Shown one piece after another: positions 3,186-49,237 of a stretch of DNA of 64,000 nt. Numbering within the stretch: the first letter of the stretch is position 1; every line of letters starts with the position of its first letter. The stretch is taken from the NCBI RefSeq assembly GCF_006345805.1, contig NW_021832125.1, positions 124,001-188,000 of the forward strand, written 5' to 3'. The stretch is from Octopus sinensis. Its lineage: Eukaryota. Position numbers and translations under genes: made by a program. The notes under the pieces are model-generated. The model was not told the DNA's origin. It searched no databases and saw only the letters and a list, made by a program, of their open reading frames with translations.

Positions 3186-3600
3186 AGTATCGTAGGAGAA
3201 TTTCCAAGGCATGTTTGAAAACAGTAATCTGAATGTATTGAGGTTTTTCTCATTCAGCTTCGAACACTGGTTCCTCCAACCGGAGTTTGAGTGTTTTCTC
3301 GAAGTCTTCTTGGGAAAAGAGTGCTTCCGATATAATTTGTTCGAGGCAGAAAGCAGCCGTCAAACATACTTGTTTGGGGATGTGGAGAGGAATCTGTCTT
3401 GTTCCACGGAGGGACGACAGGGACAGAATGAATTCCTCAGTCGAGAAATTGTGGCAAGAGGCAGCGGGCATGCGCCTAAAGCACTTGCAGTCGCCTTATA
3501 AACAGCTTAGATGAAAATGGTCATTACGGAGGGTGCATTAAATTCTCCATTTGTGGGGGTTTCTCACAAGACACGACTGGCATATGTCGGAGAGCGAATG
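3186..3600 (-). mobile_element. Probable L2/Jockey-like LINE fragment fused to the RLE element
   Basis: YIQITVFKHALEILLRYLVE matches the pre-RT segment of the LINE at about 17.76 kb (YIPITVFKHAPIIFLQYLT). It contains in-frame stops. Confidence 0.4.
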
Positions 3601-22969: not shown

Positions 22970-23835
22970 TTTTTTTTTTTTTTTTTATTAAAATGGGGAA
23001 TAAGTTATACACGAATTAATAAAGAGCCTGGAAGTCAGCTCAAAGTCGCCGCACTGCGTATCGAGTGGCAGTTTCCGCGGAGCACTGCGACCGAGATTCG
23101 CTGGAAGAGCCAGCTCGTCTCCCTCCGGTCGTTGGTCTTCTTGGCGATTCTCCTGGCAATGTCGGCAAGAAGGCGAGTCGCAGACCTGCCGACAATTCCA
23201 GATGTTTCGAAGGCGAGGGGGACAAACTCGTAAGAGTCCGAAATATTTCCATACTTCGACCTCTTAGCCTCCTCAGCCTCAGCACTGGCGGAACCCGGGT
23301 TAGTGATGGACTTGAGTAACACCAACGCGGAGAACGAGTCAACACAAGTTGCGTCCCAAATCAGGTACTTGCCTTCCCTGAAAGGGAAGGTAGTCATCCC
23401 GTCAGGACGCTTTCCATCACTCCGGCAGAGACCGACTGGCTCTAGAGTGGAGGGGAAACCTGCCGACTCTAGAGCCCTTTTCACGACGTCATTGAGGTGA
23501 GTGTGGCGAGGAATTCTACCAGCACTCTTCTTGCACGAGAGGGCGTGCAAACCGTTCGGAGAGATCGTGGACCCGCACCGGCATGGGTGGGGCTGACAGA
23601 TGTCCAGGCCCAAGCGTAAGCAGACACCAATCCGTAAGGATTCGTCGTCCAAGAGATGTCCCGTACTAGGGGTAGGGAGTGCATTGAGCCAGTCTCCCGT
23701 ATGCGGCTGGCAAGCGCAGTTGAGAGATGCCAGTTGGACTTGGTCCAACTTTGACCGGAGTTTGCACAGAGTGTCTGAGCAAAAGACTTCGTCCCAGTTC
23801 TTTTGGACTGAAGGGATCGTCGGAAAAACCAGGCA
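22970..23835 (-). mobile_element. 5'-truncated CRE-clade retrotransposon (zinc knuckle plus RLE) with poly(A) tail
   Basis: ORF 23035-23841 has CRCG..H..C, RHTHLND, KRPDG, WDATC and KRSKY; a 17-nt A tail appears as T at 22970-22986. Confidence 0.92.
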
Positions 23836-24305
23836 TGTCAAAATAATTTTAACCTTATAATTTTAAATTTTAACTTTTTAACCTAATAATATTGTTTGTG
23901 ACCGGTTTTATTTTTGACCAGGTTTTATTTTGGACCGACATGCTCAGATTATAATAAAATTATATTTTTTTTAAATTTCTCCACTAAAAAAAAGATAATA
24001 ATATAAATATAATTAAAAAACCTTAATATTTATTTAATTAATTAAAGCGTGCATAATTGTTCTAGTAGATTTAACAAGAGAAGAATTGAAAATAATCAGT
24101 GATATTAAGAATAGTATATTAATTGATTCTAATATGGACAAAACTAAAAAGTATCGCCTTAAAAAATCGCAAAATTTTTTTATTTTGTTGACGAAAAGGC
24201 ATATTTTGTAAGGAATAACAAAAATCTTCGTTTTTTTGTTCGGAAGAGAGAGAACTTAAGCTAAAAACTATCAAAGTAAGCTCATATGTTGAATTTAAGC
24301 TATTA

Positions 24306-26361: not shown

Positions 26362-26784
26362 AGCTATTACATAATGCTATTACATAATGCAAATCATTTT
26401 GGGCGTGATCGGATGTTAACCCTAAATATCAGAGAAATGAGAAAAGAAGTGTTAGAGAACATACAAAAAGCTGGAGAAAATATGAAGAGGAAAAGAAGGT
26501 GGAAATTCGATGAAGAGGAAATAAATATTAGTGATCAGGTGATATTGAAACCTGACTTTGATACAAATGTATCAACAAGAAAATATCCTCTTTATGATAA
26601 CGTTGTCTCTGAAAAGTTTTGGATTGTTGAAAAGGAAGAACAGAATTATACACTATCAAAAGGAGAATTAATTAAAAATGTACACAGATCTAGGTTAAAA
26701 AAATTGTAATTTTTACTTTTTGTTACTAATAAGAAAACATAACTTTAACTTAAATTAAGATTTTAGTGTTAGGGTTAAAATTTT

Positions 26785-26878
26785 GTTTAGGGTAAAGGAG
26801 AAAATGTTTAGGGTTAGGGTTGAAATTTTGTTTAGGGTTAAGGAGAAAATGTTTAGGGTTAGGGTTGAAATTTTGTTA
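26785..26878 (+). repeat. 45-bp tandem repeat (about 2 copies) rich in TTAGGG
   Basis: Unit TTTAGGGTTAAGGAGAAAATGTTTAGGGTTAGGGTTGAAATTTTG, inside the Ginger-like element. Confidence 0.8.
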
Positions 26879-27105
26879 GTTGAGATTAAGATTTTCATAA
26901 TTAAAATTAAATTAAGTTTTTTTATGGTTTGGACAACTATTAAAAATAGGGGTTTTAAAATTAAATTAAAAATTAGGGTGTTTTAGAATTAGGATTTTGG
27001 GTGTTAAGGCTATTATTAGAATGTATATGTGTTAGGGTTATATTTTTAAAATTTTTAATTAATAGAATTATATTTAGTCTTTAATTTTTTAGAATGGAAG
27101 ACCAA

Positions 27106-27131
27106 TCTTAATAATAAAATGGTATGGTGTG

Positions 27132-27166
<35 letters not shown>

Positions 27167-29591
27167 GTGTGCACGCCAACTTCAAATTGACAAAGTACAG
27201 ATAAATTGTCAAAATCTTTCCCCCTTAGCCAATAATGGGGAACAAGCTTAAAATCATGAACTCCTCCAAGAATCTTCCACTCTACGATGTCCTCGACTTA
27301 CATGATGAGGTCCTTAAAACCTTCCCCCCCAAAAAAATTAAAAAAAATTTTCTGCATTTTGGTTAAAATGAACAACTACGATGTCCTCGACTTACATGAT
27401 GAGGTCCTTAAAACCTTCCCCCCCAAAAAAATTAAAAAAAAATTTTCTGCATTTTGGTTAAAATGAACAACTACGATGTCCTCGACTTACATGATGAGGT
27501 CCTTAAAACCTTCCCCCCAAACAAAATTAAAAAAAATTTTCTGCAGTTTGGTTAAAATGAACAACTACGAAGTCCTCGACTTACATGATGGGGTCCTTAA
27601 AACCTTCCCCCAAAAAAAATTAAAAAAAAATTTTCTGCATTTTGGTTAAAATGAACAACTACGATGTCCTCGACTTACATGATGAGGTCCTTAAAACCTT
27701 CCCCCCAAACAAAATTAAAAAAAATTTTCTGCAGTTTGGTTAAAATGAACAACTACGAAGTCCTCGACTTACATGATGGGGTCCTTAAAACCTTCCCCCA
27801 AAAAAAAATTAAAAAAATTTTCTGCATTTTGGTTAAAATGAACAACTACGATGTCCTCGACTTACATAATGAGGTCCTTGAAACCTTCCCGCCAAAAAAT
27901 CAAAAAATTATTTTCTGCATTTGATTAAAATGAACAACGTTAATGTCCTCGACATTCATGATGAGGTCCATTAAAACCTTCGAGGCAAAAATCTCACGTA
28001 TTAAGAATATCCTTGATGAAAACGACAGCGAGAATATTAACACTGATGAACTCCTAATTATTCGCGAGAAAGAAATTCAATTCATCCTATGTTTTTCTCT
28101 TTAAAATTAAATGCATATATCATTATCGACATGAATCAAAATTAAAGCTATTATCATATTTGACTTTGACAGAATGTGCAATTACAGATTGCACGACTTT
28201 GAATAGAGTATGCAATTAACAGATTTTGAAAAACCACTTTGATAGTTGAAACCACATTAGCACAATCATTAACACAATTTACCACCAATTGACGCACGAC
28301 CTTGAATAGAGTGTGCAATTAACAGATTTTGAAAAACACTTTGATAGTTGAAACCACATTAGCACAATCATTAACACAATTTACCACCAATTGACAGCGC
28401 CATCAGAAGAATTTGCGTAAAAATATTAACTATTTAGTTAAGTTTTTCGTAAAGCTAGAATTTATTTTCGGTATGCCTCTTTTCCTAAACTTTTTTATTA
28501 TTCAAAAATAATTTTTTCAATAGATAACCGAAGGAGGGAAGACGACCTTAAGAAAAGAAGTTTTTCGTAAAGATAGAATTTATTTTCTGTATGCCTCTTT
28601 TTTCCTAATATTTTTTATTATTCAAAAATAATTTTTTAAATAGATAACCGAAGGAGGAAAAACGAAGCTGAAGAAAAAACGGTCAGCTTAAGGTAATTAA
28701 TTAAATCTTTTTTGTGTGTCGCTTTTTTGGCTGCTGCTACTCTGCCTGCCGCATCTCCGCCTGCCCCATTTCCGCCAGTGGTTTGTCTAATCAAGGTCAC
28801 TAAGCTAAATCTCCGGACTATAAAGGCTCTTAAGCATTATCTTAATTGGCTGTTAAAAAAATTAGACAGGTTGTTGCCGTGGCGGCAGAGATTTTTTTTG
28901 TTTATACTATTTTACAAATTTTTAAATTTTTTTTTATTTTTTTGTTTTTAAATTATTTATTTTTATTTGTTTTTTTTTTTTATTTTTTTTGTTATTTTCT
29001 AAAAATTCAACCGGATTGAATTTTTAAACTCCTTAGATCCCTCTGGAATGCCGAATCATCTTTTAAAGTTAAAGATAGGCGTTCCAGTGGTTTTATTACG
29101 AAATCTTGCGCCACCTAAATTATGCAACGGAACCAGGTTAGTTATCAAAAATTTGATGGCTAACGTAATAGAGGCGACGATATTAACAGGTAAGTATAGA
29201 GGTGGGGATGTTTATATTCCACGAATTCCGATAATTTCTGATGAATTACCATTTAGATTTAAAAGGCTGCAATTTCCTTTGAGGATGAGTTTTGCAATGA
29301 CAATAAACAAGGCCCAGGGACAGTCATTAAAGGTAGTTGGGTTATTTTTAGAGAGTGAGTGCTTTTCACATGGACAGCTGTATGTGGGATGCTCGAGGGT
29401 AGGCAGAAGAGAAAATTTATTCATATATGCCAAGGAAGGACGGACGACAAACATCGTTTATCAACAGGCGATAGAATAGGGTTACATTAAACCAGGTAGT
29501 TTTATACATCTACATAAACTTATAGTTGTTTGATGAAACAGGCCCTCCGCAGGAGCTAGGTCGCGGTGAGCGAAGCGAGCTGCCGAGCTAG
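27106..29591 (+). mobile_element. Non-autonomous Helitron with both ends (copy 1), carrying a PIF1-like helicase C-terminal fragment
   Basis: 5' A^TC, a (CTGT)n microsatellite, a 3' GC-rich hairpin containing GCGAAGC, and a CTAG^T end. ORF 29048-29479 has [31 protein letters not shown] and FSHGQLYV. Confidence 0.92.
27282..27990 (+). repeat. About 94-bp minisatellite, about 7.5 units, inside Helitron copy 1
   Basis: Unit starts at 27282, 27376, 27471, 27565, 27659, 27753 and 27846, plus a degenerate last unit. Confidence 0.92.
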
Positions 29592-35110: not shown

Positions 35111-37317
35111 GGTGCTTACAGATATATTATGAATAGGATTGGGGATAGCGAGTCCCCCTGAGGTGCGCCAGTGTCGGTTTTAAATTTCAACATGCACTGA
35201 TAGCAATGTGTTTGAAAGTAAGACTCTGATCATATGTAATGTATCCTCATTTAAGATGCCTTCCATTCAAGCATTTTATTCTATTCTAATGTATTCACGG
35301 AAAAAGTAGATAATCCACATGCCTTTCTTGCAAGAAATCGAACAGACGAAAACGTGTAATTAATTGCTCGACCTGTGGGAATTTTTTCCATCTTTCTTGT
35401 ATTGGTCTTAAGAGGAAGCGGGCATTTGCCCTCCAGACGTGGAATTGCCCTTCGTGCGTAGTTCCTGGATGGTGTCAACCTCCCTTTGTCCTTCCCGTCT
35501 CTGACGCAGAGGATTTCCTGCGATATCTGCCCACTCTGCGACGGTGCAGGTACATCCCCGTTAGGATTCCGAAGGCAGTCAGGTTACTTGCTGCGGAAAG
35601 TCTTGCCACCTTGGTCGGAAATACCACGAAGAGTAACTCCGACGCCCTTTCATGGGGAAAACTATTCCTCTTTCCCGTCTACACTTTGTGCGTCCCGATA
35701 CAGCACCAAAAAATGGGCAAAGCCTCGCTAAAGTTTTGAAAGCGCAGATCGCTGAATTCATGCCCAATTTCGAGTCCGTCCTCTGGCCCCGTACCGAAGG
35801 GACGCACAAAGTTGAAGAAGGCCATCAAAGGCATCTGAGGCCGAAAGGATACGGCGGCTGGTACGGAAAAAACTCATGGAAGGAGACGTAAAGGCCGCTG
35901 TACGCGTCATATCCTCGGACCTGGGCACCCTTGCATATAGTACTGCTAATGTTTCAGCATTGAAGTCGAAACATCCCAGCGCCCCTGAAGACTTTCGTGA
36001 ATTCCACCTCCCTACTATCATGCCACTAATAGCCTCGGCCGCGGACGTCTCCGGTAGCATGAAATCTTTCCGCCGCCGCAGCCTAAGGCCAGGGCATGTT
36101 CGTGATTTGATATGACGGCCCTCAGGGAAAAACAGTATTGCCTTGCTTGAAAAGATCGTCGAACTCTCTAACAAGATTCTGTCCGCCGACTTATGCTCGT
36201 TTGCAAGCGAACTGATTTTCCTACTTGACATACTCAAAGCCTTCCGCGCATATATTCTGGACAACCATACTCGATTCTGCCAATGGAGTTCAACAAGGTG
36301 ACCCTCTAGATCAGGGGTGCGCAAGCTTTTTGGGTTTGCGGCCGCATAGCATTTTTTTTCCTTCTCTTCCACGGCCGCACATTTTCTGCATTATTTTTTC
36401 GATATTAATATAGTAATTTTTTTTAATTATTAAAAGTGACCGCATAAGTTGCCCATTGTCATCGAGACCGAATGAGTTCTTGGACAGGAAATGCTCTCGT
36501 TCTGATTTATTGTTATACTCTTCTGAGACTTATTCAGTTAGGCGTGCAACAAATCCTTGTTTTCTACCCAACATTGCTGATGCGCCATCTGTGCATATTC
36601 CTCTTAGACATGTCATGTCCAATTTGAATTCCAAACAACATTGTTTAACTATTTCAAATATATCTTGACCCCGTACATTTCCAGGTAGTGACTTCATGGA
36701 TAGAAAATCCTCATGTATTTCAAAATCGAAGGATAGAGTACGAATAATATGATCAGCTGAGCAGAATCACATATACCATTCGCACCATCAATGGCAAGTG
36801 AAAATAACGTAGTTTGAGAATTTAATTTTTGTAGGAGTGATAGATTAAGATGCTCGGCAATATGAAACTGTCGGCGCTGAATTGTGTCACGTGAAAGTGG
36901 AATTGCTTCAAAGTTATGCTCCTTGTCGGGATCAATGCATTTAACTGATTCCATGATACATCTTTTCACAAGTTCCCCGTCTGCAGAAGGTTTTCCAGCA
37001 GATCCAAGGATATGAGCAACTCGAAAGGATGCTTCAACTCTTGCATTTGCCACATTTAAAAAAGTTTTTAAACATTTTTTTTGTTGTCTTAATTTGTATT
37101 TCAAATTTTCGACGGAATCTTCTCTTGAACACTTGGACTTGACAACTAGGTGGTCTAAAATATAAAAATAGAACAGCGGTTCTCAACCTTTTTTAGACTG
37201 GGGACCACTTTTGCACTATAAAATTTTGTGGGGACCACCTTAAATAAAATAAACATTTTTTGGTATTAGCGCACAATTTTTGGCCTCGTCAGGGCCAGGT
37301 TTAGACATGTTCGAATA

Positions 37318-40108
37318 TCTTAATAATAAAATGGTATGGTGTGTGTCTGTCTGTGTGTGCACACCAACTTCAAATTGGCACAGTACAGATAAATTGTCAA
37401 AATCTTTCCCCTTATAATTAGCCAATAATGGGGAACAAGCTTAAAATCATGAACTCCTCCAAGAATCTTCCACCCTACGATGTCCTCGACTTACATGATG
37501 AGGTCCTTAAAACCTTCCCCCCCAAAAAAAATTAAAAAAAAAATTTCTGCATTTTGGTTAAAATGAACAACTACGATGTCCTCGACTTACATGATGAGGT
37601 CCTTAAAACCTTTCCGCCAAAAAATCAAAAAATTATTTTCTGCATTTGATTAAAATGAACAACGTTAATGTCCTCGACATTCATGATGAGGTCCATTAAA
37701 ACCTTCGAGGCAAAAATCTCAAGTATTAAGAATATCCTTGATGAAAACGACAGCGAGAATATTAACAATGATGAACTCCCAATTATTCGCGATAAAGAAA
37801 TTCAATTCATCCTATGATTTTCTCTTTAAAATTAAATGCATATATCATTATCGACCATGAATCAAAATTAAAGCTATTATCATATTTGACAGAATGTGCA
37901 ATTACAGATTGCACGACCTTGAATAGAGTGTGCAATTAACAGATTTTGAAAAACACTTTGATAGTTGAAACCACATTAGCACAATCATTAACACAATTTA
38001 CCACCAATTGACAGCGCAATTAGAAGAATTTGCGTAAAAATATTAACTACAGTGAAACCTCTCGAATCCGCTGCTTCTCGAATCCGCCGCTTCTCGAATC
38101 CGCTTGTTTTAATCAAAAATTTGAAATTTCCTATGAATGATTCTTGAATCCGCTTGTTTCTCGAATCCGCTCCTCAAGTATTATGAAAAATAATTTTTTT
38201 ATCTAATTGTAAGTTAAATTAATTAACATTTTAAAATTCTCATTACACGTTAAATTGTATTTTTGTGATGCGTCGCTGTGTTAGACTTTCTATCAACGAA
38301 AAAATTTCTATACTACGTTATATTTCTGACAACCCATTCGTTTCTGCACCTCAAATTTCCAGGATTTTTTCTTCACGGTTAAAAAAGAAAATTTCTCCGA
38401 GAACTATAAACGACCTTAAATCAAAATCGGACCTTTTGAATAGGACTGACATCAAAAAATTAAACCTAACGAGAATTCTAAAACTCAAATTTAATGAAAT
38501 TGATGTAGCGATGATAACATGGATTAACTTAATGGAATCTAGTGGAGCAATTCTATCAGATTCGATGTTAATTGCAAAAGCTCTTAAGTTTGGAAAAAAT
38601 TTTCCAGAATTTAAAGCAAGTCGTGGGTAGCTAGAAAAGTTTAAATTACGAAATGGTATCAAGTTAAGAAAATTTCACGGAGACAGTGGATCAGTAAATC
38701 ATGATGAAAAATCTATTACTGATTTTAATGAAACAATGAGTTTAAAAATTGAACAATATGGATTGGACAATGTTTATAATGCAGATGAAACTGGTGTTTT
38801 TTACAAGGCGATTCCTTCCAAAAGTGTGTGCACCAAATCACGGCCTGGAATAAAGTTGTCGAAGGATCGATTTTCGTTACTATTATGCGCAAATTGTTCT
38901 GGTTCCGATAAAAGAAGGCCTGTGATGATAGGAAGATTCAAAAGTCCAAGGTGTTTTAAAAATTTCAACATTGGAAAATATGTTACCTACACCCATTCCA
39001 ATAAGGCATGGATGAACCGTGAAATTTTTAACAAGTGGCTCAGTGATTTTGATTCTGAACTTGCAAAGAAAAAAAGAAAAATTCTACTTGTAATAGATCA
39101 ATGTCCATCTCATCATGCACAATGGATAAAATGTGAAACAATCACAATCAACAGTGAATCTAAGAACTACGAAAATAATTATGAAGAAATAATTAAGAAA
39201 TTTCAAATTGACGATCCAATATCTTATAGTGAATTTGTTGATTACGGATATACTGAAAATGAAGAGCTAATCGAATTTTTAGACAAATCTGAACAAGCTG
39301 GTACATTACAGTCAAAAAAAGTTCAATCAGTTAGTGATTTTATTTAATAATTATACTTAGGAAACAATTATTGAAGAGGAATCAAATGAGAAAAAAGTTG
39401 ATCTCTCAGAAGCCTTCAGAGCTCTAGAGATTATTAAAACTTATGCTTCTCAGGTAAATGCAGATATAGATGATCATGAAAATATTATGCGAATTGGGGA
39501 AATGTTAAGAAAATCAATTAAAAAAAATAAAATTTCTGATTTTTTTGAATATAAATAATTTTATGTATTCAGTCATTTGTATATAAAAAGAAATACTTAA
39601 TCTATATTGTAAGTTCATATTTCAACTATAAAATATTATTTAAATTGCCTCTCTAATCCGCCGATTTCTCGAATCCGCCGATTTTTTGGTCGGTCCCAAA
39701 ATCGGCGGATTCGAGAGGTTTCACTGTATTTAGTTAAGTTTTTCGTAAAGATAGAATTTATTTTCGGTATGCCTCTTTTCCTAAACTTTTTTATTATTTA
39801 AAAATAATTTTCTAAAAAGATAACCGAAGGAGGAAAAACGAAGCTGAAGAAAAAACGGTCAGCTTAAGGTAATTAATTAAATCTTTTTTGTGTGTCGCTT
39901 TTTTGGCTGCTGCTACTCTGCCTGCCGCATCTCCGCCTGCCTCATTTCTGCCTGCCCCATTTCCGCCAGTGGTTTGTCTAATCAAGGTCACTAAGCTAAA
40001 TCTCGGACTATAAAGGCTCTTAAGCATTATCTTAATTGGCAGGATGTTGCCGTGGCGGCAGAGATTTTTTTTGTTTATACTATTTTACAAATTTTTAAAG
40101 TTTTTTTT
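37318..40108 (+). mobile_element. Helitron copy 2 (5' part only), interrupted by a pogo
   Basis: A^TC 5' end; near-identical to the 5' region of copy 1, with fewer 94-bp units; 3' part absent. Confidence 0.9.
38050..39726 (+). mobile_element. pogo/Tigger (CENP-B HTH plus DDE_1) transposon, defective
   Basis: 21-bp perfect TIRs CAGTGAAACCTCTCGAATCCG with TA TSD; the empty site AACTATTTAG is present in Helitron copy 1. FKASRG*LEKFK carries a nonsense codon, NADETG is present, and the downstream core is deleted. Confidence 0.93.
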
Positions 40109-43100
40109 TCTATCTTTACGAAAAACTTCTTTTCTTAAGGTCGTCTTCCCTCCTTCGGTTATCTATTGAAAAAATTATTTTTGAATAATAAAAAAGTTTA
40201 GGAAAAGAGGAATACCGAAAATAAATTCTATCTTTACGAAAAACTTAACTAAATAGTTAATATTTTTACGCAAATTCTTCTGATTGCGCTGTCAATTGCT
40301 GGTAAATTGTGTTAATGATTGTGCTAATGTGGTTTCAACTATCAAAGTGTTTTTCAAAATCTGTTAATTGCACACTCTATTCAAGGATGTGTAAGGATGT
40401 CCCGGCAGGCTGCATCCTCACTCAGTTTATGGAACTGCAATGTATGTATGGGCTTTGGCCGGAAGACCCAGGCGAAAATATCGAATGAACCTGTCGTCTC
40501 TAGCGAGCCGTTGGATTTCGACAATACGGATTCTCTCCTGCTTTTCTTGTCTGAGCAAAGGAAGGCCAACAAGATTCCACTTAAGATCCCGAGACCCGTC
40601 CGGATCCCTGCAGCTATATGCCTGGCTTCCGCTATTGACGATGCACTCACGTCCAACGACCAAGAGGCCTGGCTCAAACTCTTCGGTTTTGCCCCGCTTG
40701 CACTTGGCATACCTTACACTGAGTCAAACGAGCCACATCGGAACACTAGAGAAAGTTCCATGCATGGAAACTCACTTTCCTCAAAAATGAAAAAAAATAT
40801 CCACGATTTCCAATCACGATCTATTAACAAAACGGAATTTTCCAAAGCAAAACATCCGGACGCCGATCATACGCTCTTTCGGAATTGCCCAGATACACTC
40901 GGAGAGAGAGTAAATCGTAAACTTCTTGTTGGCGACGTCCGGGCGGCGTTGCGGGTCGTTTCCAGCGACGATACCGTCCTGGCTCCAACACCTGAAGTCC
41001 TCGAGCAGATCAGACGAAAACATCCATGTCCGCCGGAAGATTACCGCCCATTCGTGCTCCCGGGAGATATGCCAAGGACAACTGTTACTGAAGGCGAAGT
41101 GCGGCGCAGCATTTCGTCGTTCGCGGCGAGCAGCAGTGGAGGTCTCGATGGCTTGCGACCAGGTCACATCAAGGATCTCACGGCTGGGGCTACTGCGGAG
41201 GCGGGCCGCAACCTTGTCAAATCAATCACAAGACTGGTTATGCGCATTTTGAACGGGGATATCCCTCCTCTCGCAAGGGAGCTTCTTTTCAGCGCACATC
41301 TACTTGGCTTCAAAAAACCCGAAGGTGGGGCCCGCCCTATCGCGGTCGGGAACTACTTCAGAAGGCTAACAGCTAAAATTGCATGCAGTCTTGTCTGTCC
41401 GAGAATATCTGAAGAATTCTCCCCCTTCCAACTCGGAGTTGGGGTAAAGAACAGATGTGAGGCGGCGGTGCATGCCGCAAGGTGCTTTTTCACACAGAAA
41501 AACGAAGAAAATCCAAAAATGGGAGTCAAGCTTGACATCTGCAATGCCTTTAATTCACTGCGGAGGGATCAAATTTTCGAGACTGTAAGCAAACGAGCCC
41601 CGGAACTCATTCCACTCGTCTACCTGGCCTACGGAACCAAGTCTTCACTCGTCTTTGCGGACAAGATTATCTATTCGGAGACTGGAGTCCAGCAAGGGGA
41701 CCCGCTTGGTCCACTTCTCTTTGCGTTGGCAATCGACGAAACTGTACGTTCTATCAGCGCGGAACTGAACCTCTGGTATCTTGATGATGCCACGATTGGA
41801 GGGCCGTGGGGAAAAGTTTTTGATGTTCTGTCACAAGCCGTGCCTGTACTACGAAAACTCGGACTGGATATAAATATAAAGAAATCGGAGCTGATAAATA
41901 TCACATACTCGGAAAGTGATTTTATCAACGTGGTCAAGTCTTTCCAATCGATATTACCTGGGATTACTGTCTTACCTCGGGAGAGGGCATACTTTCTTGG
42001 GTGCCCACTTGGCGAAAAGGAACTGCGGTGCCATCTGCTGGAAAAAAACAAGGGCCTTTCTAGAGTTACGGAGAAACTCTCCTTACTCAATGCTCATACT
42101 GCATTCTTCCTTTTGAAAAATAGCATTGGCTTGCCTAAACTCCAATACGCTCTCCGTTGTTCTCCCTGCTTGGAACATCAAGACATTCTACAGACACTGG
42201 ATAGGACTTTGAGAAGTTCAGCTGAATCGCTCTTGAACATCCACTTTGACGAACCTGGTTGGAATCAATGCAAGCTTCCTACACGCATCGGAGGAACGGG
42301 TCTCAGGTCGGCGCTGGATTTCGCATTCCCGGCATATCTGTCATCGCTTTCAAGCTGCATTCATCTCGTCCAGGAAATCCTACGTAACACTACTGGACTC
42401 TCCTTGGACACAGTATTTGACAAAGCTTGCTTGCAATGGAAGGAAGCCGGACTTTCAATCCCAGATGATGTCTCGAGACAGAATTGTTGGGACGCAATAT
42501 CATGCAAGGCTGTCGTTGATGACCTGAAGCGGGAGTTGAACCAACACCGGCTCGTCTGTTTGCTATCCGGGGCACAGCACGGGAGTGGTGCATGGCTCCA
42601 CGCATTTCCATGCAGTTCATTCGGTACGCTTATGGACGACGATTGTGTGAGAATCGGTGTTGCACAACGCTTGGGTCTTGACGTCTGTCAGGAACACAGA
42701 TGCCGGTGTGGAGGAATAGTCGATTCCAAAGGACTACACCCTTTGTCTTGCAAGAGGAGTGCAGGTCGCGCTCCCCGCCATGCCGCACTCAACGACATAA
42801 TACGACGGGCCCTCGAGAGCGCAGGATTTCCAGCACACCTGGAACCCATCGGGCTTGACCGGGGAGATGGCAGAAGGCCCAATGGGATAACTCTTTTCCC
42901 GTACTCCCAGGAAAAATCACTCGCATGGGATGCGACGTGCGTAGACACGTTCTCCCAGTCCATGATTCTTCGGAATATTCATTCGCCCGGTTGGGCTGCT
43001 AATGCAGCGGAAAAGGCGAAGATTTCTAAGTATTTGGAGATCGGAAAACTTTTCCGTTTTGTCCCAATCTCGATAGAGACGTCTGGTGTAGTGGGATCCA

Positions 43101-44035
43101 AAACCGCGGAATTTCTCAAGGAAATTGGGGCGATGCTGGCTAAACGAAGGAGGGACAGTCGCGAGGGGTATTGGCTTCGCCAACGTATCGGAATTGCAGT
43201 TCTTCGTGGCAACACGCACGCGATACTGGCTGCCGGAGCGTGACGATTTATAATATAATTAAACTAACCTAGCTTCGTTAAAAAAAAAAACAAACAAATC
43301 TGTTAATTGCACACTCTATTCAAGGTCGTGCAATCTGTAATTGCACATTCTGTCAAAGTCAAATATGATAATAGCTTTAATTTTGATTCATGGTCGATAA
43401 TGATACATGCATTTAATTTTAAAGAGAAAATCATAGGATGAATTGAATTTCTTTATCGCGAATAATTGGGAGTTCATCATTGTTAATATTCTCGCTGTCG
43501 TTTTCATCAAAGATATTATTAATACGTAAGATTTTTGCCTCGAAGGTTTTAATCGACCTCATCATGAATGTCCAGGACATTAACGTTGTTCATTTTAATC
43601 AAATGCAGAAAATAATTTTTTGATTTTTTGGCGGAAAGGTTTTAAGGACCTCATCATGTAAGTCGAGGACATCGTAGTTGTTTATTTTAACCAAAATGCA
43701 GAAAATTTTTTTTTAATTTTTTTTTGGGGGGAAGGTTTTAAGGACCTCATCATGTAAGTCGAGGACATCGTAGTTGTTCATTTTAACCAAAATGCAGAAA
43801 ATTTTTAAAAAAATTTTTTTTGGGGGGAAGGTTTTAAGGACCTCATCATGTAAGTCGAGGACATCGTAGGGTGGAAGATTCTTGGAGGAGTTCATGATTT
43901 TAAGCTTGTTCCCCATTATTGGCTAATTATAAGGGGAAAAGATTTTGACAATTTATCTGTACTTTGCCAATTTGAAGTTGGTTTGCACACACAGACAGAC
44001 AGACAGACACACACCATACCATTTTATTATTAAGA
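40109..44035 (-). mobile_element. Helitron copy 3 (5' part only, inverted), interrupted by a CRE element
   Basis: Reverse complement of the Helitron 5' region; TC terminus at 44035-44034; (CTGT)n and 94-bp units present. Confidence 0.9.
40387..43295 (+). mobile_element. Near full-length CRE-clade non-LTR retrotransposon, single 948-aa ORF (40397-43243)
   Basis: RT (KLDICNAFN, GVQQGDPLGPLLF, WYLDD), CCHC knuckle and RLE region; poly(A) at 43280-43290; 30-bp TSD (40357-40386 and 43296-43325). Confidence 0.93.
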
Positions 44036-44759
44036 TTGTACAATTAGTTTTAAATTTAATATATTGTTATTTTTCGAAAATTCCTGGGGACCACTAAAAA
44101 TTTTCTGGGGACCACGATTGAGAACCGCTTGATTAATTTCAATGTTTTTGATTTATACTTAATTGTACAATTAGTTTTAACTTTAATATATTTTTATTTT
44201 TCGAAAATTTCTGGGGTCCACTAAAAATTTTCTGGGGACCACGGTTGAGAACCGCTGAAATAGAATTTTATTTAATATGAATATTTTTAATTATTATTTA
44301 GGGTTTTTCTTGATTAATTAACACTATGAGCATTATATTTAAGATTAGTTGCTTGATGACCTAATTGTGCCCACGGCCGCACATTCATCGACTCACGGCT
44401 GCACTTGCGCACCTCTGCTCTAGATCCTCGCTTATTCTCCCTCGCAATCCATCAAACAACGAGATCGTGTAAAACTGACCATAACATGTGGAATTTGGAT
44501 GATGGAGTAATCGAAAGAACCCCCAAAGGCATCTTGAAAACGCTGAAGTCGCATGTGTTTAATTTCGGAGCGCTGGGGATTGAATTTAACTGCGGCAAAT
44601 GTGAAATTGTGAATGTCAACACGGACAAACTTTCCTTTCGGAAGTGGATGACCAAATTTGACAAACTGCTACCTGGATGTACTTTCCCCCCTCAAAGAAG
44701 ACTTGATTTTTCTTGGATCTCATATTTTTGAAATTAGTATCTAAGCTGTTACGAAGACT

Positions 44760-47700
44760 AAAATATCGGAATTTCGAAGATTATTCCGAGTGCATGAGAG
44801 CTAGCACTAAGCCCCCGAATATGATTGTGAGACAGCCAATAAACCAGTGGTTCTTAACCTGGGGTCCGCGAAAGATTCCAGGGGGTCCGCGAGATTTTTC
44901 TGAAACTTTATTTAAATGTTTCTATTTAATGATAACAATTTTAAATTAATTTATAATAGAATTAAATCATAATTAATAATATCTCTTTTAGATATATTAT
45001 AAATTAATATATTTTAATATTTAATAATACTGAGGAGGCTAAATTACTTTAAAGCTGAATGTAACTCAATTATTTATAAAAATCGTATATATATATTTAT
45101 TTTTTAGTAAAAGTTAATAAAATTTTTAAGCACGCTATTGATATGAATTCCTCGAATGTTATTAAGATACGCAAATATAATCCTGATTATATAAAATATG
45201 GGTTTATTTGTATTGATAAAGATGGATTTGAAAGCCCAAAATGTGTTGTGTGCATGAAAATTCTGTCACACAATAGCATGAAACCAACAACTCTTGTGAG
45301 ACACTTGCGCACATGTCATCCCCATCTAATCCACAAAAATAAGGATTATTTTATTTCTTTGCGTAAAATGATGAAAAATCAAGTATTGACTCGTTTTATA
45401 CAAACTTTGCCTTCTGATAATTCCATGCTATTGGCATCTTACATGATCTCATTACGTATAGCGAAAGAAAAAAAACCTCATAATATTGCCGAAAAACTGA
45501 TTCTTCCTTGTTGTAAAGACATAGTACGTACTCTTATTGGCACTCATGCTGAAAATATGATTTTGGAAATACCATTATCGAATGATACTGTTCATCGACG
45601 AATTTCTGAAATGTCAGAAAATATTAAGTGTCAGGTTATTGATATTATATTATTTATTTCAGGTGGTAGAACAAATAAAAACTTCATGCCATCAAAATTT
45701 CGCTATACAAGTTGATGAATCCACCGATGTAGCGAACTGTGCTCAATTAATAATATTTGCTCGTTATGTCTATGACGGAGATTTTAAAGAGGAATTTTTA
45801 TTTTCCGATTCGCTTGAATCGACCACTAAAGGAGAAGATATTTTTCAAGCAATTTCTATGTTTTTTGACAGTGGTGGGTTATCTTGGAATAATGTATGTT
45901 GTTGCACAACCGATGGAGCTCCAGCAATGCTTGGCTTTCATTCTGGCTTTAGAGGCCAAGTTAGACTTGCTAACCAGGAAACGAAACATATGCATTGTAT
46001 GCTACATCGATATGCACTTGCTGCAAAAACATTACCTTCAGATTTAAGATATGTTCTCGATGATGTCGTACATATCATAAATTATATTAAAAAGAGTGCT
46101 TTAAATTCGCGCATTTTCAGACTTATTTGCGAAGAATTTGAAAAGGATGGAAAGGCTTTGTTATTCCACACTAAGGTGAGATGGCTATCTCGGGGAAACA
46201 TTCTTGTTAGAGTTTTTTCTTTGAGGAATGAATTATCTGAATATTTTATTCGCGAAAACAATTCCAAATCATCGGAATTTATTTCGAAATTAATGGATAG
46301 TTAATGGCTATCTAAAATTGCTTACTTGAGAGATGTCTTCTCTCGTATAAATTCACTCAACAAATCGCTTCGGGGAAGACATGAAACAATAATTCATTTT
46401 GTGGATAAAATTAAGTTTGTTAACTGTTTCATATTAATTATTAGTGCTTTTTTGATGAAGTTAACACTGTGGAAAGAAAAAGTAAAACTAAATAATTTTA
46501 CTATGTTTGAATCTTTTGAAGAACAATTTGTAAATATAGATGCATTTGAAATCAAAAAAATAACCGAACTTATTTATGCACATTTAACATATCTTCAACA
46601 AGAAGTAAATAAATACTTTCCAGAATTGAACAAAATTGATTTGAAATTCATTCGTACACCATTCAGTGTTGATCCACGTTTGGTCGATGAAAATATCGAA
46701 GAGGCTTTTATTGACATGATCAATAATTCAAACGCAAGAGATTTGTATGAAAAACTTGCTTTATCAAGATTTTGGTGCGAAATGTGTAAGCATTATCCTT
46801 CCGTAGGTGCAAATGCATTAAATTTTTTGCTTATATTCCCGACAACATATTTATGCGAACATGGCTTCTCAGCACTTCTCAATATAAAAAATAATCATCG
46901 CGCAAGACTGAATATTGAAGATGACATCAGGGTTTGCTTGTCGACAACCGAGCCTCTTATTGAAAAAATTGCCTCGAAAAAACAATATCAACCTTCTTAC
47001 TAATTTTCTCTATTGATTTAATAATAAATTTTGTTTTTAGATAAGTAAAATTTTTTTGACAAAAAACTTAATAAATATGTAGGGGGTCCACGAAATTTTT
47101 CATTTACTCGCAAGGGGTCCGCGGACAAAAAAGGTTGAGAACCACTGCAATAAACAGTCCAAGCGATGTTGGTTAAGCTTAGGCTTGAGGTTGTTCGACT
47201 TCTGATCACAGAGAATCCTGTCCCATTCGTCTTGTGCGTGTGTATTCTGCGGAAGCTCAAGAGACATCCCAAGCCAGCGACTTTCTGCGGCGACTGACTC
47301 TGGGTCCATAGGAGATTCGGTAACGGGTTGGAGAATCTCTTGAACAAGGGTGCTCGTGGCATGTGTAGAAGAAAGGAATTCTTGCAAAGAAAGGTCAGTG
47401 GCTAAACGCACACCGATGCCGCCACGACCGATGGGGAGTGTTGCCTGTTCCCAGCCAAGATCGTCAAAGGGGGCATTACATATTGATTCGAGGCAAGTCC
47501 TGAAAGCATGATCAAATCTAGAGAGGCTCTCGGCATTGGCAAAGCATGGAGCGCTTCTAAGTGTAAACAATAGTTTGGGGATGGCGAAACAGTTGCTTAA
47601 TAGAAATAGGGCCGAATGGGAATCGATGATACCAAGATTACGGGACATTAATACAAGGTTTGAAGTTTTTTCTGATAATGTCAAAACGACACCGGTTGTA

Positions 47701-48190
47701 AAAATCGGGGAACCCAGAATCTTGAGATTTCTGGGCGAGGTGACATGGATGTTGGGAAGTAATGACTCGATAGAACCATGGGCAACAGAGAAACGGTGGA
47801 CATCATAACTGATGTTAAAGATTTCAGATTTTTGGGGATTGATTTCGAGGCCAATTGCGTTTAATGCAGGAATTAAAACTCTCAGGTCGTCAAGACGGAT
47901 TCGAGAGTACCTCCGATAGTGGCATCGTCCAAATACCACGCATTGAAAAGGGAGGATACACTTATGGCAACGGGATCGATTGCAAGGGCAAAGAGAAGAG
48001 GACCGAGAGGGTCGCCTTGTTGGACACCGTTGCAGGACGAGATTGAGTGATCGCCAGCGATAACAAAGCTGGGGCGACCGTAGGCCAAAGCGACCAGGCG
48101 GACAATAAAAGGTGAACGCCGGATAATAGATTCAAATATTACCTCCCGACGAACACTGTTAAAGGCGTTAATCAGGTCCAGCTTGACTAT
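44760..48190 (-). mobile_element. CRE fragment (RT and post-RT region) split by a hAT
   Basis: VKLDLINAF, NGVQQGDPLGPLLFALAI and WYLDDATIGG; RLDCLL/AVSQSYSGA rejoins across the hAT TSD. Confidence 0.88.
44845..47147 (+). mobile_element. Complete Buster/ZBED8-like hAT; spliced 600-aa transposase frame (45143-47003) with one nonsense codon
   Basis: TIRs CAGTGGTTCTTAACC / GGTTGAGAACCACTG; perfect TSD CAATAAAC; introns 45635-45662 and 46415-46444; in-frame TAA at 46302-46304 (MDS*WLSKIAY). Confidence 0.92.
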
Positions 48191-48267
48191 ACCATTTTCA
48201 AGTCAATTTGTCAATAACAAACTTCAAATGTCGTCTGAAAAATCAATTTGTCAATAACAAACTTAAA

Positions 48268-48655
48268 ATTTTTTTTTTAACTAAAAAGTTTGTTCAATCT
48301 AAAAGTAAAAAGATAGCTAAGCTAATTAAAGGCCTCACGAGACACCCGGCCAGCCTCGCGAATGGCGAAGCCGTTCCTTCGGATCACAGCAATCGATAAA
48401 CGTTCCAGGAGCCAAGAATACTCTCTTAGATCGTGGCTAGTCCTTGAAATCCGTCGGCCGAGCGAGCGAAGGAAGCGGAGTGTCTTGGGGCCGAAGATCC
48501 CGGAGGACTCCACGGCAATTGGAGTAAAGAACAGCGAGTTGGAGAGGTGGCCGTACTTGAGAATCTTTCGCTCCTCGGCCTGCCTCGAAGCGTGCCCAGG
48601 ATAGGCGGCGGACAGAGCGAAATTTCCCAGCGAGAACGTGTCCGAACAGGTATAC
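48268..48655 (-). mobile_element. Short 5'-truncated CRE 3' end with poly(A)
   Basis: YTCSDTF, KILKY, PIAVESSGIFG and WLLERLSIAVIRRNG; A tail at about 48268-48277. Confidence 0.85.
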
Positions 48656-48733
48656 GATTTTCAAGTCGATTTGTCAATTATGAACCCCAAATTTACAATT
48701 ACAAACTTCAAATATCATCTGGATAATTCAATT

Positions 48734-49237
48734 CTTTTTTTTAATGAAACAAGTATTTAATTACAAGTTAATTAATTAAAAGCTTCATGGGCGGGAAGCC
48801 GACGCGATCGAGAAAGAATTAGAGCGTACTATCGCAAGGGATATCCGCTCGAAAAACCATCTCGATTCGCGGGCGTCGCCTGTGATAGCAGACATGCGGG
48901 ACCCGATCTCTTGAACGAAGCTGATTGCCTTACTGCCCAAGAAACCGGAAGTCTCAACCGCGAATGGAAGGAATTGGAACTTCTCCGTAAGTGAGGAGTA
49001 CTTCCGCATCTTTTTGCATTCCGCGATTGTGACAATAGATGCAGGAGCGGAGGCGGACATCAGCAGGTTCTGAGGCGAGAAAGAGTCCACACACGTGGCA
49101 TCCCAGGTGAGAGGCTTCCCCCTGTTAAAAAGAAACACGGTTATCCCGTCAGGCCTTTTTCCGTCCCCCCGATCGATCCCAGAGGGTTCAAGCAGGGAGG
49201 GGATTCCGGCTACTTCCAGGGCTATCAGGATAAGGTC
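48734..49237 (-). mobile_element. 5'-truncated CRE 3' end (RLE domain) with poly(A), abutting the satellite
   Basis: KRPDG, WDATCVD, KKMRKY, FAVETSG and ERISLAIVR; A tail at about 48734-48742. Confidence 0.88.

What the first reader, a model, noticed from the sequence alone, without database searches (positions are those of the whole stretch)
35311..35730. CRE retrotransposons here encode an N-terminal PHD finger
Seen: an open frame with no start codon, missing from the ORF track, reads TCLSCKKSNRRKRVINCSTCGNFFHLSCIGLKRKRAFALQTWNCPSC. This is a complete C4-H-C3 PHD pattern and runs in frame into the CRE N-terminal region (IPVRIPKAVR...). The 948-aa copy begins with the matching second half (CVRMSRQAASSLSLWNCNVC, same C-x13-W-x-C-x2-C spacing), so two diverged copies share it. 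Known: PHD fingers often read histone H3 tails, and classic trypanosomatid CRE elements carry C2H2 fingers instead. Inference: an RT-RLE retrotransposon that may use a chromatin reader for targeting. The usual H3K4me3 cage residues (M before C3, W before the His) are replaced by V and F, so the ligand may differ. I cannot tell whether this architecture is already catalogued.
Basis: partly seen in the sequence, partly recalled or inferred. Interest (0 to 1): 0.8.

Follow-up and report, generated by a model that had tools for sequence, protein, structure and literature searches.

The report
PHD finger on CRE-type retrotransposons
The animal genome stretch holds several dead copies of a CRE-type jumping gene whose protein begins with a genuine PHD zinc finger, a domain that hundreds of related elements in public data share, so it is a real but untested candidate for how these elements choose where to land.

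Summary
At 35320-35457 (+) an open frame encodes a complete C4-H-C3 PHD finger (Pfam PF00628, 32.3 bits against a cut-off of 24, E 1e-7). It is the only such pattern in the six-frame translation of the window; 50 shuffles gave none. It runs in frame into the conserved N-terminal region of an RT-RLE retrotransposon. Copy B (40387-43296) is 5'-truncated exactly at the sixth zinc ligand, with a 30-bp target-site duplication and an A-rich tail. A third, decayed copy lies at 3585-3262 (-).

The RT groups with Repbase/RepeatMasker Cre-1_BM (class CRE-II; 313 bits, 39% identity) and then with SLACS, CRE1, CRE2 and CZAR (99% NJ bootstrap). It does not group with R2, R4, NeSL or HERO.

Intact relatives encode PHD, RT and RLE in one ORF. 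The PHD plus N-terminal module hits 355 protein clusters at E<=1e-10.

Within the family the N-terminal module alternates between PHD, a CCHC knuckle and C2H2 fingers. That points to a swappable target-engagement module.

The H3K4me3 aromatic cage is not conserved, whereas a basic N-x-R-K loop is, so the ligand is open. I found no paper describing a PHD finger in CRE or other RLE elements. PHD fingers are known in CR1, Chlamys, Ginger and Rehavkus elements.

The parts
35320..35457 (+). Complete PHD finger (C4-H-C3) of decayed copy A
   Evidence: Pfam PF00628 32.3 bits, E 1e-7. Only strict C4HC3 match in the window. AlphaFold pLDDT about 96 for residues 1-50; superposes on solved PHD fingers at 1.1-1.5 A.
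35314..36308 (+). Copy A: a 5'-nearly-complete but dead CRE-II element. PHD and N-terminal region are in one frame to 35730, followed by frameshifts and internal deletions. RT fragments lie at 35828-36112 and 36225-36308; the rest is missing.
   Evidence: Family-profile hits are colinear: profile 20-154, 191-293 and 441-468. Three-frame reading. tblastn.
35536..35712 (+). Conserved post-PHD N-terminal helical region (IPxxIPKxxR ... W..L..F) of copy A
   Evidence: Alignment A3: P86, R90, A94, L97, W114 and F120 are invariant or nearly so. Predicted helices 65-78, 87-106 and 111-125.
40387..43296 (+). Copy B: a 5'-truncated CRE-II element that starts at the sixth zinc ligand of the PHD finger. 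The RT-CCHC-RLE reading frame is otherwise open (the 948-aa ORF 40397-43243 starts at an internal Met). It has a short 3' UTR and an A-rich tail.
   Evidence: Empty-site alignment with two uninterrupted copies of the host repeat. Family profile 46-982, 1095 bits. Pfam RVT_1.
40357..40386 (+). 5' copy of the 30-bp target-site duplication of copy B (AAATCTGTTAATTGCACACTCTATTCAAGG)
   Evidence: Direct repeat flanking the insert; single copy in the empty sites at 37885-37975 and 28165-28355.
43297..43326 (+). 3' copy of the 30-bp target-site duplication of copy B
42716..43030 (+). CCHC knuckle and PD-(D/E)xK restriction-like endonuclease of copy B (CRCG..H...C, RHAALND, LEP, RRPNG, WDAT, K..KY). 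The catalytic PD motif reads PN.
   Evidence: Translation. Motif scheme for CRE-group RLE from PMC12857005. Nearly invariant columns in A1.
3262..3585 (-). Copy C: decayed PHD finger (two in-frame stops, fourth ligand Cys changed to Arg, C-terminal half lost) plus the IPLHIPKQV N-terminal region. It abuts a Dong/R4-like LINE.
   Evidence: tblastn. Reading with X at stops and N-terminal profile hits 5-35 and 70-116, E 1.6e-11. The neighbour is classified.
23047..23817 (-). Another CRE-II copy, 5'-truncated, C-terminal linker and RLE only (no N-terminus left)
   Evidence: Family profile 727-983, 400 bits.
47148..49237 (-). Cluster of further CRE-II fragments (RT-linker 48190-47148; two RLE ends at 48651-48346 and 49237-48794)
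   Evidence: Family-profile hits. tblastn.

Best explanation
What it is (shown). The PHD finger is the authentic N-terminal domain of a widespread animal lineage of single-ORF non-LTR retrotransposons of the CRE group. This is the lineage that Repbase/RepeatMasker labels CRE-II, with Cre-1_BM as type member. Its architecture is PHD, helical N-terminal region, RT, CCHC knuckle, then restriction-like endonuclease. The window holds at least three diverged, dead copies that keep all or part of the finger:
- Copy A is almost 5'-complete but frameshifted and deleted.
- Copy B is a typical target-primed reverse-transcription product: 5'-truncated inside the finger, with a 30-bp target-site duplication and an A-rich tail.
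- Copy C is heavily decayed.

How it most likely works (inferred). In RLE elements the N-terminal module places the ribonucleoprotein on its target before the endonuclease nicks and reverse transcription starts. In this family that slot is filled alternately by a PHD finger, a CCHC knuckle or C2H2 fingers. The PHD finger is therefore most likely the target-engagement or chromatin-tethering module. My estimates for what it binds:
- about 0.4 for a nucleosome feature (a histone tail, possibly together with DNA);
- about 0.3 for nucleic acid directly, through the conserved N-x-R-K-(R/K) loop;
- the remainder for a host protein or nuclear import.

It is unlikely to be a classical H3K4me3 reader in most members.
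For: PHD identity:
- Pfam hit above the gathering score.
- A family profile hits BPTF, PHF2, PHF8, DPF, TAF3 and CFP1 PHD fingers in the PDB at E 5e-9 to 1e-7.
- The model has pLDDT about 96 over residues 1-50 and superposes on AL3, AL1, PHF8 and PHF2 PHD fingers at RMSD 1.1-1.5 A.

Part of the element:
- 25 of 50 relatives with at least 80 aa upstream of the IPxxIPK motif have a strict C4HC3 pattern at their extreme N-terminus in the same ORF as RT and RLE.
- Zinc ligands and W43 are invariant.
- The PHD plus N-terminal profile hits 355 cluster representatives at E<=1e-10. Most of the top 150 cover profile positions 2-134.

CRE membership: BLAST and NJ tree against reference RTs taken from the supplements of PMC5678591 and PMC7650587.

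TPRT hallmarks: TSD, A-rich tail and 5' truncation. These agree with what is described for CRE elements (single ORF, RT plus RLE, poly-A, TSDs, one or two zinc fingers) in PMC12278014 and PMC3636483.

Module swapping: relatives without PHD carry C.(V/S)C.R...T..G..R.HGP....C.GSG or C2H2 motifs at the same place.

Ligand hints: over 106 cluster representatives the positions equivalent to the BPTF cage are aromatic in 3%, 1%, 8% and 40%. N10, R12 and K13 are conserved in 64%, 72% and 83%.
Against: - No functional data exist. Nothing here shows zinc, histone, DNA or RNA binding.
- Only one insertion (copy B) has defined boundaries, so no target preference can be read.
- The element-rich, satellite-adjacent setting fits heterochromatin targeting, but it fits passive accumulation equally well.
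- The reference set for the tree is small, and NJ support for monophyly of the animal group alone was low (33%).
- All copies in the window are dead. That the finger is needed for mobility is inferred only from its conservation in intact relatives.
- Half of the relatives with long N-termini lack the finger, so it is not essential to the lineage as a whole.
Confidence: 0.85

Rival explanations
1. The finger is a classical methyl-lysine (H3K4me3) reader that steers insertion to active promoters, as the closest solved PHD fingers (BPTF, PHF2, PHF8, TAF3, ALFIN-like) would suggest.
For: The nearest sequence and structure neighbours are nearly all H3K4me3/me2 readers. 40% of family members have an aromatic residue, mostly Trp, at the position of BPTF W32.
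Against: The other three cage positions are aromatic in only 3%, 1% and 8% of 106 representatives. Copy A has Thr, Ser, Val and Phe at the four positions. The copies seen here sit in repeat-rich, satellite-adjacent DNA and not at promoters.
Confidence: 0.12
2. The finger does not read histones at all. Its conserved basic loop (N-x-R-K-R/K) binds target DNA or the element's own RNA, or serves as a nuclear localisation signal. It would then be functionally equivalent to the C2H2 or CCHC modules it alternates with.
For: The slot alternates with C2H2 and CCHC knuckles, which are typical nucleic-acid binders. The basic loop is the most conserved non-ligand feature. Acidic residues used by H3K4me0 readers are rare at positions 7-9: 8%, 14% and 3%. 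[quoted passage not shown]
Against: Most characterised PHD fingers bind histone H3 tails. The predicted fold keeps the strand that normally pairs with the H3 peptide.
Confidence: 0.3
3. The juxtaposition is accidental: a host PHD exon, or a fragment of another transposon, happens to lie in frame upstream of a CRE fragment.
For: Copy A has no start codon and is surrounded by other element fragments.
Against: The same junction (PHD, about 35-residue linker, IPxxIPK region) is found in three diverged copies in the window. It is also found in intact single ORFs of at least 25 database proteins and in more than 100 cluster representatives.
Confidence: 0.01
4. The elements are not CRE but belong to another RLE clade (HERO, NeSL/Utopia, R4/Dong or R2).
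For: All RLE elements share RT, CCHC and RLE. The classical CRE trait of insertion into spliced-leader genes is absent here.
Against: BLAST gives 313 bits to Cre-1_BM and 63-98 bits to SLACS, CRE1, CRE2 and CZAR, against at most 47 bits to R2, NeSL and Utopia and no hit to HERO, R4 or Dong. The NJ clade with the CRE references has 99% support. The motifs LD..NAFN..RR, GV.QGDPLGP and YLDD are shared with SLACS and CRE.
Confidence: 0.04

Closest known systems
Cre-1_BM and other 'LINE/CRE-II' entries of Repbase/RepeatMasker
   Same: Same lineage: 38.6% identity and 313 bits over 433 aa of RT and linker. The same motifs are shared (GGLDGL, GG.RPIAVG, QLGVG, LD..NAFN, G.QQGDPLGP, WYLDD, GGIGVR, ALPAFLA, C.CG...H.LSC).
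   Different: The published alignment holds only the region from RT to the CCHC knuckle, so I could not see whether Cre-1_BM itself starts with a PHD finger. The window copies are a different, much diverged family. The best database protein is only 48% identical.
Trypanosomatid CRE1, CRE2, SLACS and CZAR
   Same: Single ORF, central RT, C-terminal CCHC plus PD-(D/E)xK endonuclease, A-rich tail, sizeable target-site duplications (PMC12278014; PMC3636483). The RTs cluster together at 99% NJ support.
   Different: Those elements insert at one position of spliced-leader RNA genes and carry one or two zinc-finger-like motifs, with no PHD reported. Here copy B sits in an unrelated interspersed repeat, Rfam finds no spliced-leader or other RNA gene, and the N-terminal module is a PHD finger.
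CR1-like non-LTR elements with a PHD domain in ORF1 (Kapitonov and Jurka 2003, as cited in PMC8557442; Metcalfe and Casane 2014, PMC4120745)
   Same: A PHD finger recruited by a non-LTR retrotransposon.
   Different: Those are APE-type, two-ORF elements with the finger in ORF1, the RNA-binding chaperone protein. Here the finger is fused to the N-terminus of the single RT-RLE protein, in the slot that holds the DNA-targeting fingers of RLE elements.
R2 elements (N-terminal C2H2 zinc finger(s) plus Myb)
   Same: Same overall plan: an N-terminal small module, then RT, a CCHC knuckle and RLE (PMC5678591). PDB R2 proteins are the best solved relatives of the copy B RT.
   Different: A different clade (at most 47 bits). 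R2 uses sequence-specific DNA-binding fingers and targets 28S rDNA.
Other transposons with captured chromatin-reader domains: Chlamys Penelope-like elements with PHD insertions, Rehavkus and Ginger DNA transposons with PHD, arthropod Copia with a methyl-CpG-binding domain, and chromoviruses with chromodomains (the last from my own knowledge)
   Same: A host-type chromatin module fused to a transposition enzyme and thought, or shown, to bias integration (PMC8557442; PMC2836005 and PMC6673714 listed).
   Different: Different element classes and different positions of the domain. None is an RLE-type LINE.

Membership tests
PHD finger (Pfam PF00628) | Cys4-His-Cys3 ligand pattern with canonical spacing | tested here: met
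   C3, C6, C18, C21, H26, C29, C45 and C48 of copy A. All are invariant in 23 aligned family members and aligned in 106 of 146 representatives.
PHD finger (Pfam PF00628) | Profile score above the curated gathering threshold, and better than RING or other treble-clef models | tested here: met
   32.3 bits against a cut-off of 24; RING models 14.5 bits.
PHD finger (Pfam PF00628) | Conserved aromatic residue two residues before the seventh ligand (W-x-C-x2-C) | tested here: met
   W43 is invariant in A3 and Trp in 100 of 106 representatives. It is also present in copy B (WNCNVC).
PHD finger (Pfam PF00628) | Interleaved two-zinc fold | tested here: met
   Prediction only. pLDDT is about 96 for residues 1-50. 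Foldseek gives RMSD 1.1-1.5 A over 48-51 residues and TM (target) 0.5-0.8 to the AL3, AL1, PHF8, PPS and PHF2 PHD fingers. Zinc binding itself is not testable here.
H3K4me3-reading PHD subclass (BPTF/ING/TAF3 type) | Aromatic cage of two to four residues, including a Trp two residues before the His ligand | tested here: not met
   Copy A has Thr, Ser, Val and Phe at the four BPTF cage positions. Across 106 representatives these positions are aromatic in 3%, 1%, 8% and 40%. Some members may still form a half cage.
H3K4me0-reading PHD subclass (AIRE/BHC80 type) | Acidic residues after the second ligand and between ligands 3 and 4 that contact unmodified K4 and R2 | tested here: inconclusive
   Positions 7-9 are acidic in 8%, 14% and 3%; position 19 is acidic in 19%. 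The loop is instead basic (N-x-R-K). The residue mapping to AIRE is from memory, not from an alignment made here.
CRE group of RLE non-LTR retrotransposons | RT-domain phylogeny places the element with CRE1, CRE2, SLACS and CZAR | tested here: met
   BLAST gives 63-98 bits to the four references, at most 47 bits to other RLE clades, and none to HERO, R4 or Dong. The NJ clade has 99% bootstrap. The reference set is small, so a maximum-likelihood tree with all of Repbase is still desirable.
CRE group of RLE non-LTR retrotransposons | Single ORF with central RT and C-terminal CCHC plus PD-(D/E)xK endonuclease | tested here: met
   The copy B ORF has RVT_1 at 306-506, then CRCG..H...C, RHAALND, LEP, RRP(N)G, WDAT and K..KY. 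The motif scheme is from PMC12857005.
CRE group of RLE non-LTR retrotransposons | Target-site duplication and A-rich 3' tail | tested here: met
   30-bp TSD and the tail AAAAAAAAAAACAAAC at copy B, defined against two empty sites.
Classical (trypanosomatid) CRE elements | Site-specific insertion into spliced-leader RNA genes | tested here: not met
   Copy B lies inside an unrelated interspersed repeat. No Rfam family reaches threshold anywhere in the window.
Classical (trypanosomatid) CRE elements | N-terminal C2H2-type zinc-finger motif(s) | tested here: not met
   All three copies in the window with an N-terminus left carry PHD remnants. C2H2 or CCHC modules occur only in other branches of the family.
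RepeatMasker class LINE/CRE-II (Cre-1_BM) | Close similarity to the class's reference protein | tested here: met
   38.6% identity over 433 aa, E 7.5e-101. Repbase and Dfam themselves were not available, so the N-termini of catalogued CRE-II consensus sequences could not be inspected.

The most novel reading that the evidence does not exclude
The PHD finger tethers the CRE-II ribonucleoprotein to a particular nucleosome state, and swapping the N-terminal module (PHD, CCHC knuckle or C2H2) re-programs where these elements integrate. That would make it a LINE counterpart of the chromodomain of chromoviruses, and a natural example of chromatin-guided instead of sequence-guided target-primed reverse transcription.
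Probability: 0.3. Interest if true: 0.7.

Novelty: new variant of a known kind. Interest (0 to 1): 0.45.

Why it matters
RLE-type LINEs such as R2 are being developed as programmable gene-insertion tools, and their N-terminal DNA-binding fingers set the target.

This finding describes a natural, widespread lineage in which that slot holds a PHD finger and is exchanged with CCHC and C2H2 modules. It offers a ready-made comparative system for asking how target choice evolves in target-primed reverse transcription, and whether chromatin state, and not only DNA sequence, can direct it.

It also adds RLE elements to the list of transposons that have recruited chromatin-type domains.

For genome annotation the point is practical. 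PHD plus RVT_1 'genes' in invertebrate genomes and metagenomes are CRE-II retrotransposons, not host chromatin factors.

Tried and rejected
- Six literature searches for a PHD finger in CRE or RLE elements found no description. One search failed on a term that was too short, on term syntax, and one search returned only 'cell line creation' noise. Kojima's 2020 review is not held.
- The profile search with the N-terminal alignment in the word-indexed database gave only 6 hits and no useful names. The exhaustive representative search was informative instead.
- Rfam found no spliced-leader, rRNA, snRNA or tRNA gene that could be a CRE-type target.
- DNA-level self-comparison found no similarity between the CRE-II copies. 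They are different, old families, so no family consensus can be built from this window.
- The sequences from the first supplement (PMC7650587) were machine-read from a PDF and lacked HERO, NeSL and R4. They were replaced by the FASTA alignment of PMC5678591.
- I first suspected that the leading 'C' of copy B (CVRM...) came from the flanking target DNA. I rejected this because the unambiguous duplication ends at 40386 and CVRMSRQ aligns with the relatives' C-A-R-L-T-R-N.
- I could not identify the host species. The best named relatives are Octopus sinensis proteins at about 50% identity over partial length.
Full report
**1. The observation**

Translating 35311-35730 (+) gives a stop codon and then STCLSCKKSNRRKRVINCSTCGNFFHLSCIGLKRKRAFALQTWNCPSC. 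The frame stays open through IPVRIPKAVRLLAAESLATLV...WGKLFLFP to 35730. There is no in-frame ATG upstream, where stops lie at 35311 and 35287.

Pfam's PHD model matches end to end (1-47 of 47) with 32.3 bits and E 1e-7, above the curated cut-off of 24. RING-type models reach only about 14 bits. A strict C-x2-C...C-x2-C...H-x2-C...C-x2-C pattern occurs once in the six-frame translation of the 64-kb window, at 35320, and never in 50 shuffled windows.

**2. The surroundings**

The window is eukaryotic, about 35% G+C, and densely packed with mobile elements:
- pogo/Tigger DDE_1 transposase fragments;
- BED-finger and hAT-like ORFs;
- Dong/R4-like LINEs;
- a 75-bp satellite from 49259 to the end of the window.

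I built a profile from 25 full-length relatives and searched it against the six-frame translation. It maps at least seven separate fragments of one retrotransposon lineage.

Copy A is colinear on the + strand: profile 20-154 at 35317-35712, 191-293 at 35828-36112, and 441-468 at 36225-36308. It is therefore almost complete at its 5' end, but frameshifted, internally deleted and cut off after the middle of the RT.

Copy B (profile 46-982, 1095 bits) contains the 948-aa ORF.

Copy C, at 3585-3262 (-), is a heavily decayed N-terminus. Read with X at its two stops it gives CQSCLVRNPHKWRIXCTLRNDHFHLSC, followed by IPLHIPKQVCL, and matches the N-terminal profile at positions 5-35 and 70-116 (E 1.6e-11). 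It abuts a Dong/R4-like LINE.

The copies share no DNA-level similarity, so they come from different old families.

**3. Boundaries of copy B**

The DNA on both sides of copy B belongs to an unrelated interspersed repeat. Two uninterrupted copies of that repeat lie in the window (37317-38092 and 27100-28935). Aligning the two junctions with these empty sites shows three things:
- a 30-bp target-site duplication, AAATCTGTTAATTGCACACTCTATTCAAGG, at 40357-40386 and 43297-43326;
- an element spanning 40387-43296;
- a 3' end of about 50 bp of untranslated sequence plus AAAAAAAAAAACAAAC.

The element's first codons read C-V-R-M-S-R-Q-A-A-S-S-L-S-L-W-N-C-N-V-C. They align position by position with C-A-R-L-T-R-N-S-S-A-A-L-S-T-W-H-C-R-P-C of the intact relative P0001.

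Copy B is therefore a classical 5'-truncated product of target-primed reverse transcription, cut at the sixth zinc ligand. The ORF's ATG is an internal methionine.

Copy B's endonuclease has RPNG where 90% or more of relatives have RPDG. Its open frame therefore does not mean it encodes an active enzyme.

**4. The finger belongs to the element**

A search with the 948-aa protein returned 460 relatives at E<=1e-10. The best are only 45-50% identical. Named ones come from Octopus sinensis, a sponge and insects.

Full-length members of about 970-1050 aa start M-(8-20 residues)-PHD and continue through IPxxIPK, RT, CCHC and RLE in one ORF. Several already carry a precomputed PF00628 hit. Of the 50 relatives with at least 80 residues upstream of the IPxxIPK motif, 25 have a strict C4HC3 pattern.

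In an alignment of copy A with 22 of them, the eight ligands and W43 are invariant and K13 is nearly so.

An exhaustive profile search of 1.84 billion cluster representatives with this 135-position module found 4365 hits at E<=0.001, 355 at E<=1e-10 and 31 at E<=1e-30. Most of the top 150 cover both the finger and the helical region. The architecture is abundant in public data.

**5. Clade**

Repbase is not available here. I therefore took reference RT sequences from two published supplements: PMC7650587 (machine-read) and the FASTA alignment of RLE LINEs in PMC5678591. The copy B RT-linker region scores as follows:

| Reference | Bits | Note |
|---|---|---|
| Cre-1_BM (labelled LINE/CRE-II) | 313 | 38.6% identity over 433 aa |
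| SLACS | 98 | |
| CRE2 | 85 | |
| CZAR | 80 | |
| CRE1 | 63 | |
| Cre-1_HM (labelled LINE/CRE-II) | 61 | E 6.8e-13 |
| Utopia, R8 | 47 | |
| R2Bm | 44 | |
| NeSL | at most 38 | |
| HERO, R4, Dong | none | no hit at E<=1e-3 |

An NJ tree on 409 columns joins the window copy, ten database relatives, Cre-1_BM and the four trypanosomatid elements with 99% bootstrap. R4/Dong, NeSL/Utopia, HERO and R2 fall outside. Support for the animal group alone was weak.

Shared motifs (LD..NAFN..RR, GV.QGDPLGP, YLDD) agree with this placement. The single ORF, RT plus RLE, A-rich tail and sizeable duplication fit the description of CRE elements in PMC12278014 and PMC3636483.

Two traits of the trypanosomatid elements are absent. 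There is no insertion into spliced-leader genes, and Rfam finds no RNA gene at all in the window. There are also no C2H2 fingers in these copies.

**6. What kind of PHD finger it is**

A family profile hits the PHD fingers of BPTF, PHF2, PHF8, DPF2/3, CFP1, TAF3 and KDM7A in the PDB at E 5e-9 to 1e-7. An AlphaFold model of copy A's first 129 residues, built with the 23-sequence alignment, has a mean pLDDT of 86, with about 96 over the finger. A disordered linker (53-57) and a helical bundle follow. The finger superposes on the AL3, AL1, PHF8, PPS and PHF2 PHD fingers at 1.1-1.5 A.

These neighbours are mostly H3K4me3 readers, but the cage is not kept. By the HMMER alignment to BPTF, the four cage positions in copy A are Thr, Ser, Val and Phe. 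Over 106 cluster representatives with all ligands aligned, they are aromatic in 3%, 1%, 8% and 40%. Acidic residues typical of readers of unmodified H3K4 are also uncommon.

The conserved non-ligand features are a basic loop N10-x-R12-K13-(R/K)14 between ligands 2 and 3, and V30, L32, Q36, A37, L40 and W43. A nucleic-acid or acidic ligand, or a nuclear-import role for the basic loop, cannot be excluded.

**7. Module swapping**

Relatives without the PHD pattern are not simply truncated. At the same place many have a C.(V/S)C.R..(L/V)T..G..R.HGP....C.GSG knuckle, or one or two C2H2 fingers. P0059 has both a PHD and a C2H2 finger.

In the small tree, most PHD-bearing members form one subclade (69%). 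P0068 lies near Cre-1_BM and the C2H2 bearers.

In RLE elements the N-terminal module is a separate small globular domain (PMC5678591). In R2 it binds the target DNA; this comes from my own knowledge of R2 biochemistry and the R2 structures listed. The simplest reading is that the PHD finger occupies the target-engagement slot.

**8. Mechanism, with what is shown and what is inferred**

Shown:
- domain identity;
- its place in the ORF;
- clade;
- TPRT hallmarks;
- conservation and swapping of the module.

Inferred:
- the finger positions the ribonucleoprotein on chromatin or DNA before the RLE nicks the target;
- exchanging the module changes target choice.

My estimates are about 0.4 for a nucleosome or histone-tail ligand, about 0.3 for direct nucleic-acid binding, and the rest for protein partners or nuclear import. 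A classical H3K4me3 reader is unlikely for most members (about 0.12). The repeat-rich, satellite-adjacent location of all copies is compatible with heterochromatin targeting, but equally with passive survival of dead copies there.

**9. Novelty**

PHD fingers in transposons are known:
- ORF1 of CR1-like LINEs (Kapitonov and Jurka 2003, cited in PMC8557442; PMC4120745);
- Chlamys Penelope-like elements and several Chlamydomonas elements;
- Rehavkus and Ginger DNA transposons.

The lineage itself is catalogued as CRE-II. Six full-text searches found no description of a PHD finger in CRE or any RLE-type LINE, but I could not inspect Repbase or Dfam entries.

I rate it a new variant of a known kind. 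It is of moderate interest to specialists, more so because of the module swapping and the current use of RLE elements as insertion tools.

Noticed in passing
relatives P0062, P0078, P0082, P0084, P0097, P0109-P0119 (CCHC); P0083, P0090, P0093 (C2H2); P0059 (PHD + C2H2): The N-terminal slot of the CRE-II family alternates between PHD, a conserved C.(V/S)C.R...T..G..R.HGP....C.GSG knuckle that I could not assign to a named family, and C2H2 fingers.
   Followed up: partly
relatives P0021, P0034, P0041, P0044, P0096 (PF00443); P0093 (PF02338): Some family members carry an extra ubiquitin-specific protease (UCH/USP) domain after the endonuclease, or an OTU protease domain, in the same ORF. Deubiquitinase domains fused to an RLE-type LINE are unusual and may be gene-prediction fusions or true accessory domains.
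   Followed up: no
window 42881-42883: Copy B's endonuclease reads RRPNG where 90% or more of relatives, and two other fragments in the window (23035-23841 and 48785-49240, both -), read (K/R)RPDG. The catalytic Asp of the PD-(D/E)xK motif is replaced although the ORF is open.
   Followed up: partly
window 27100-28935; 37317-38092; 39727-40386 plus 43297-44036: An unclassified interspersed repeat with internal 92-96-bp tandem units (ATGTCCTCGACTTACATGATGAGGTCC...) is present three times. The third copy is split by copy B, which allowed the empty-site test.
   Followed up: partly
window 49259-64000: A 75-bp satellite (about 75-88% unit identity, strong G over C skew on the + strand) fills the last 15 kb. 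It creates long artefactual ORFs on the - strand and is interrupted by a pogo/Tigger DDE_1 transposase ORF at 52422-53060 (-).
   Followed up: partly
window 1258-3207 (-) and 16547-17158 (-): Dong/R4-like RLE LINE fragments (RT 103 bits to Dong; C-terminal KPDI(V/F)V...IEVGIT endonuclease). The first directly abuts the decayed PHD-bearing copy C.
   Followed up: partly
window 26762-26877: A 45-bp tandem unit containing TTTAGGGTTAGGGTT, i.e. telomere-like TTAGGG motifs, inside the repeat-rich region.
   Followed up: no
window 24777-26348 (-); 45143-47003 (+); 38736-39347 (+): Further DNA-transposon remnants: two long ORF sets with weak BED or Spin-doc-type zinc-finger hits that look hAT-like, and a pogo/Tigger DDE_1 fragment lying between copies A and B.
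   Followed up: partly
window 11544-12137 (-): A 197-aa ORF rich in charged, coiled-coil-like sequence in a strongly AT-skewed stretch (8-14 kb). It could be an exon of a host gene. Not examined.
   Followed up: no
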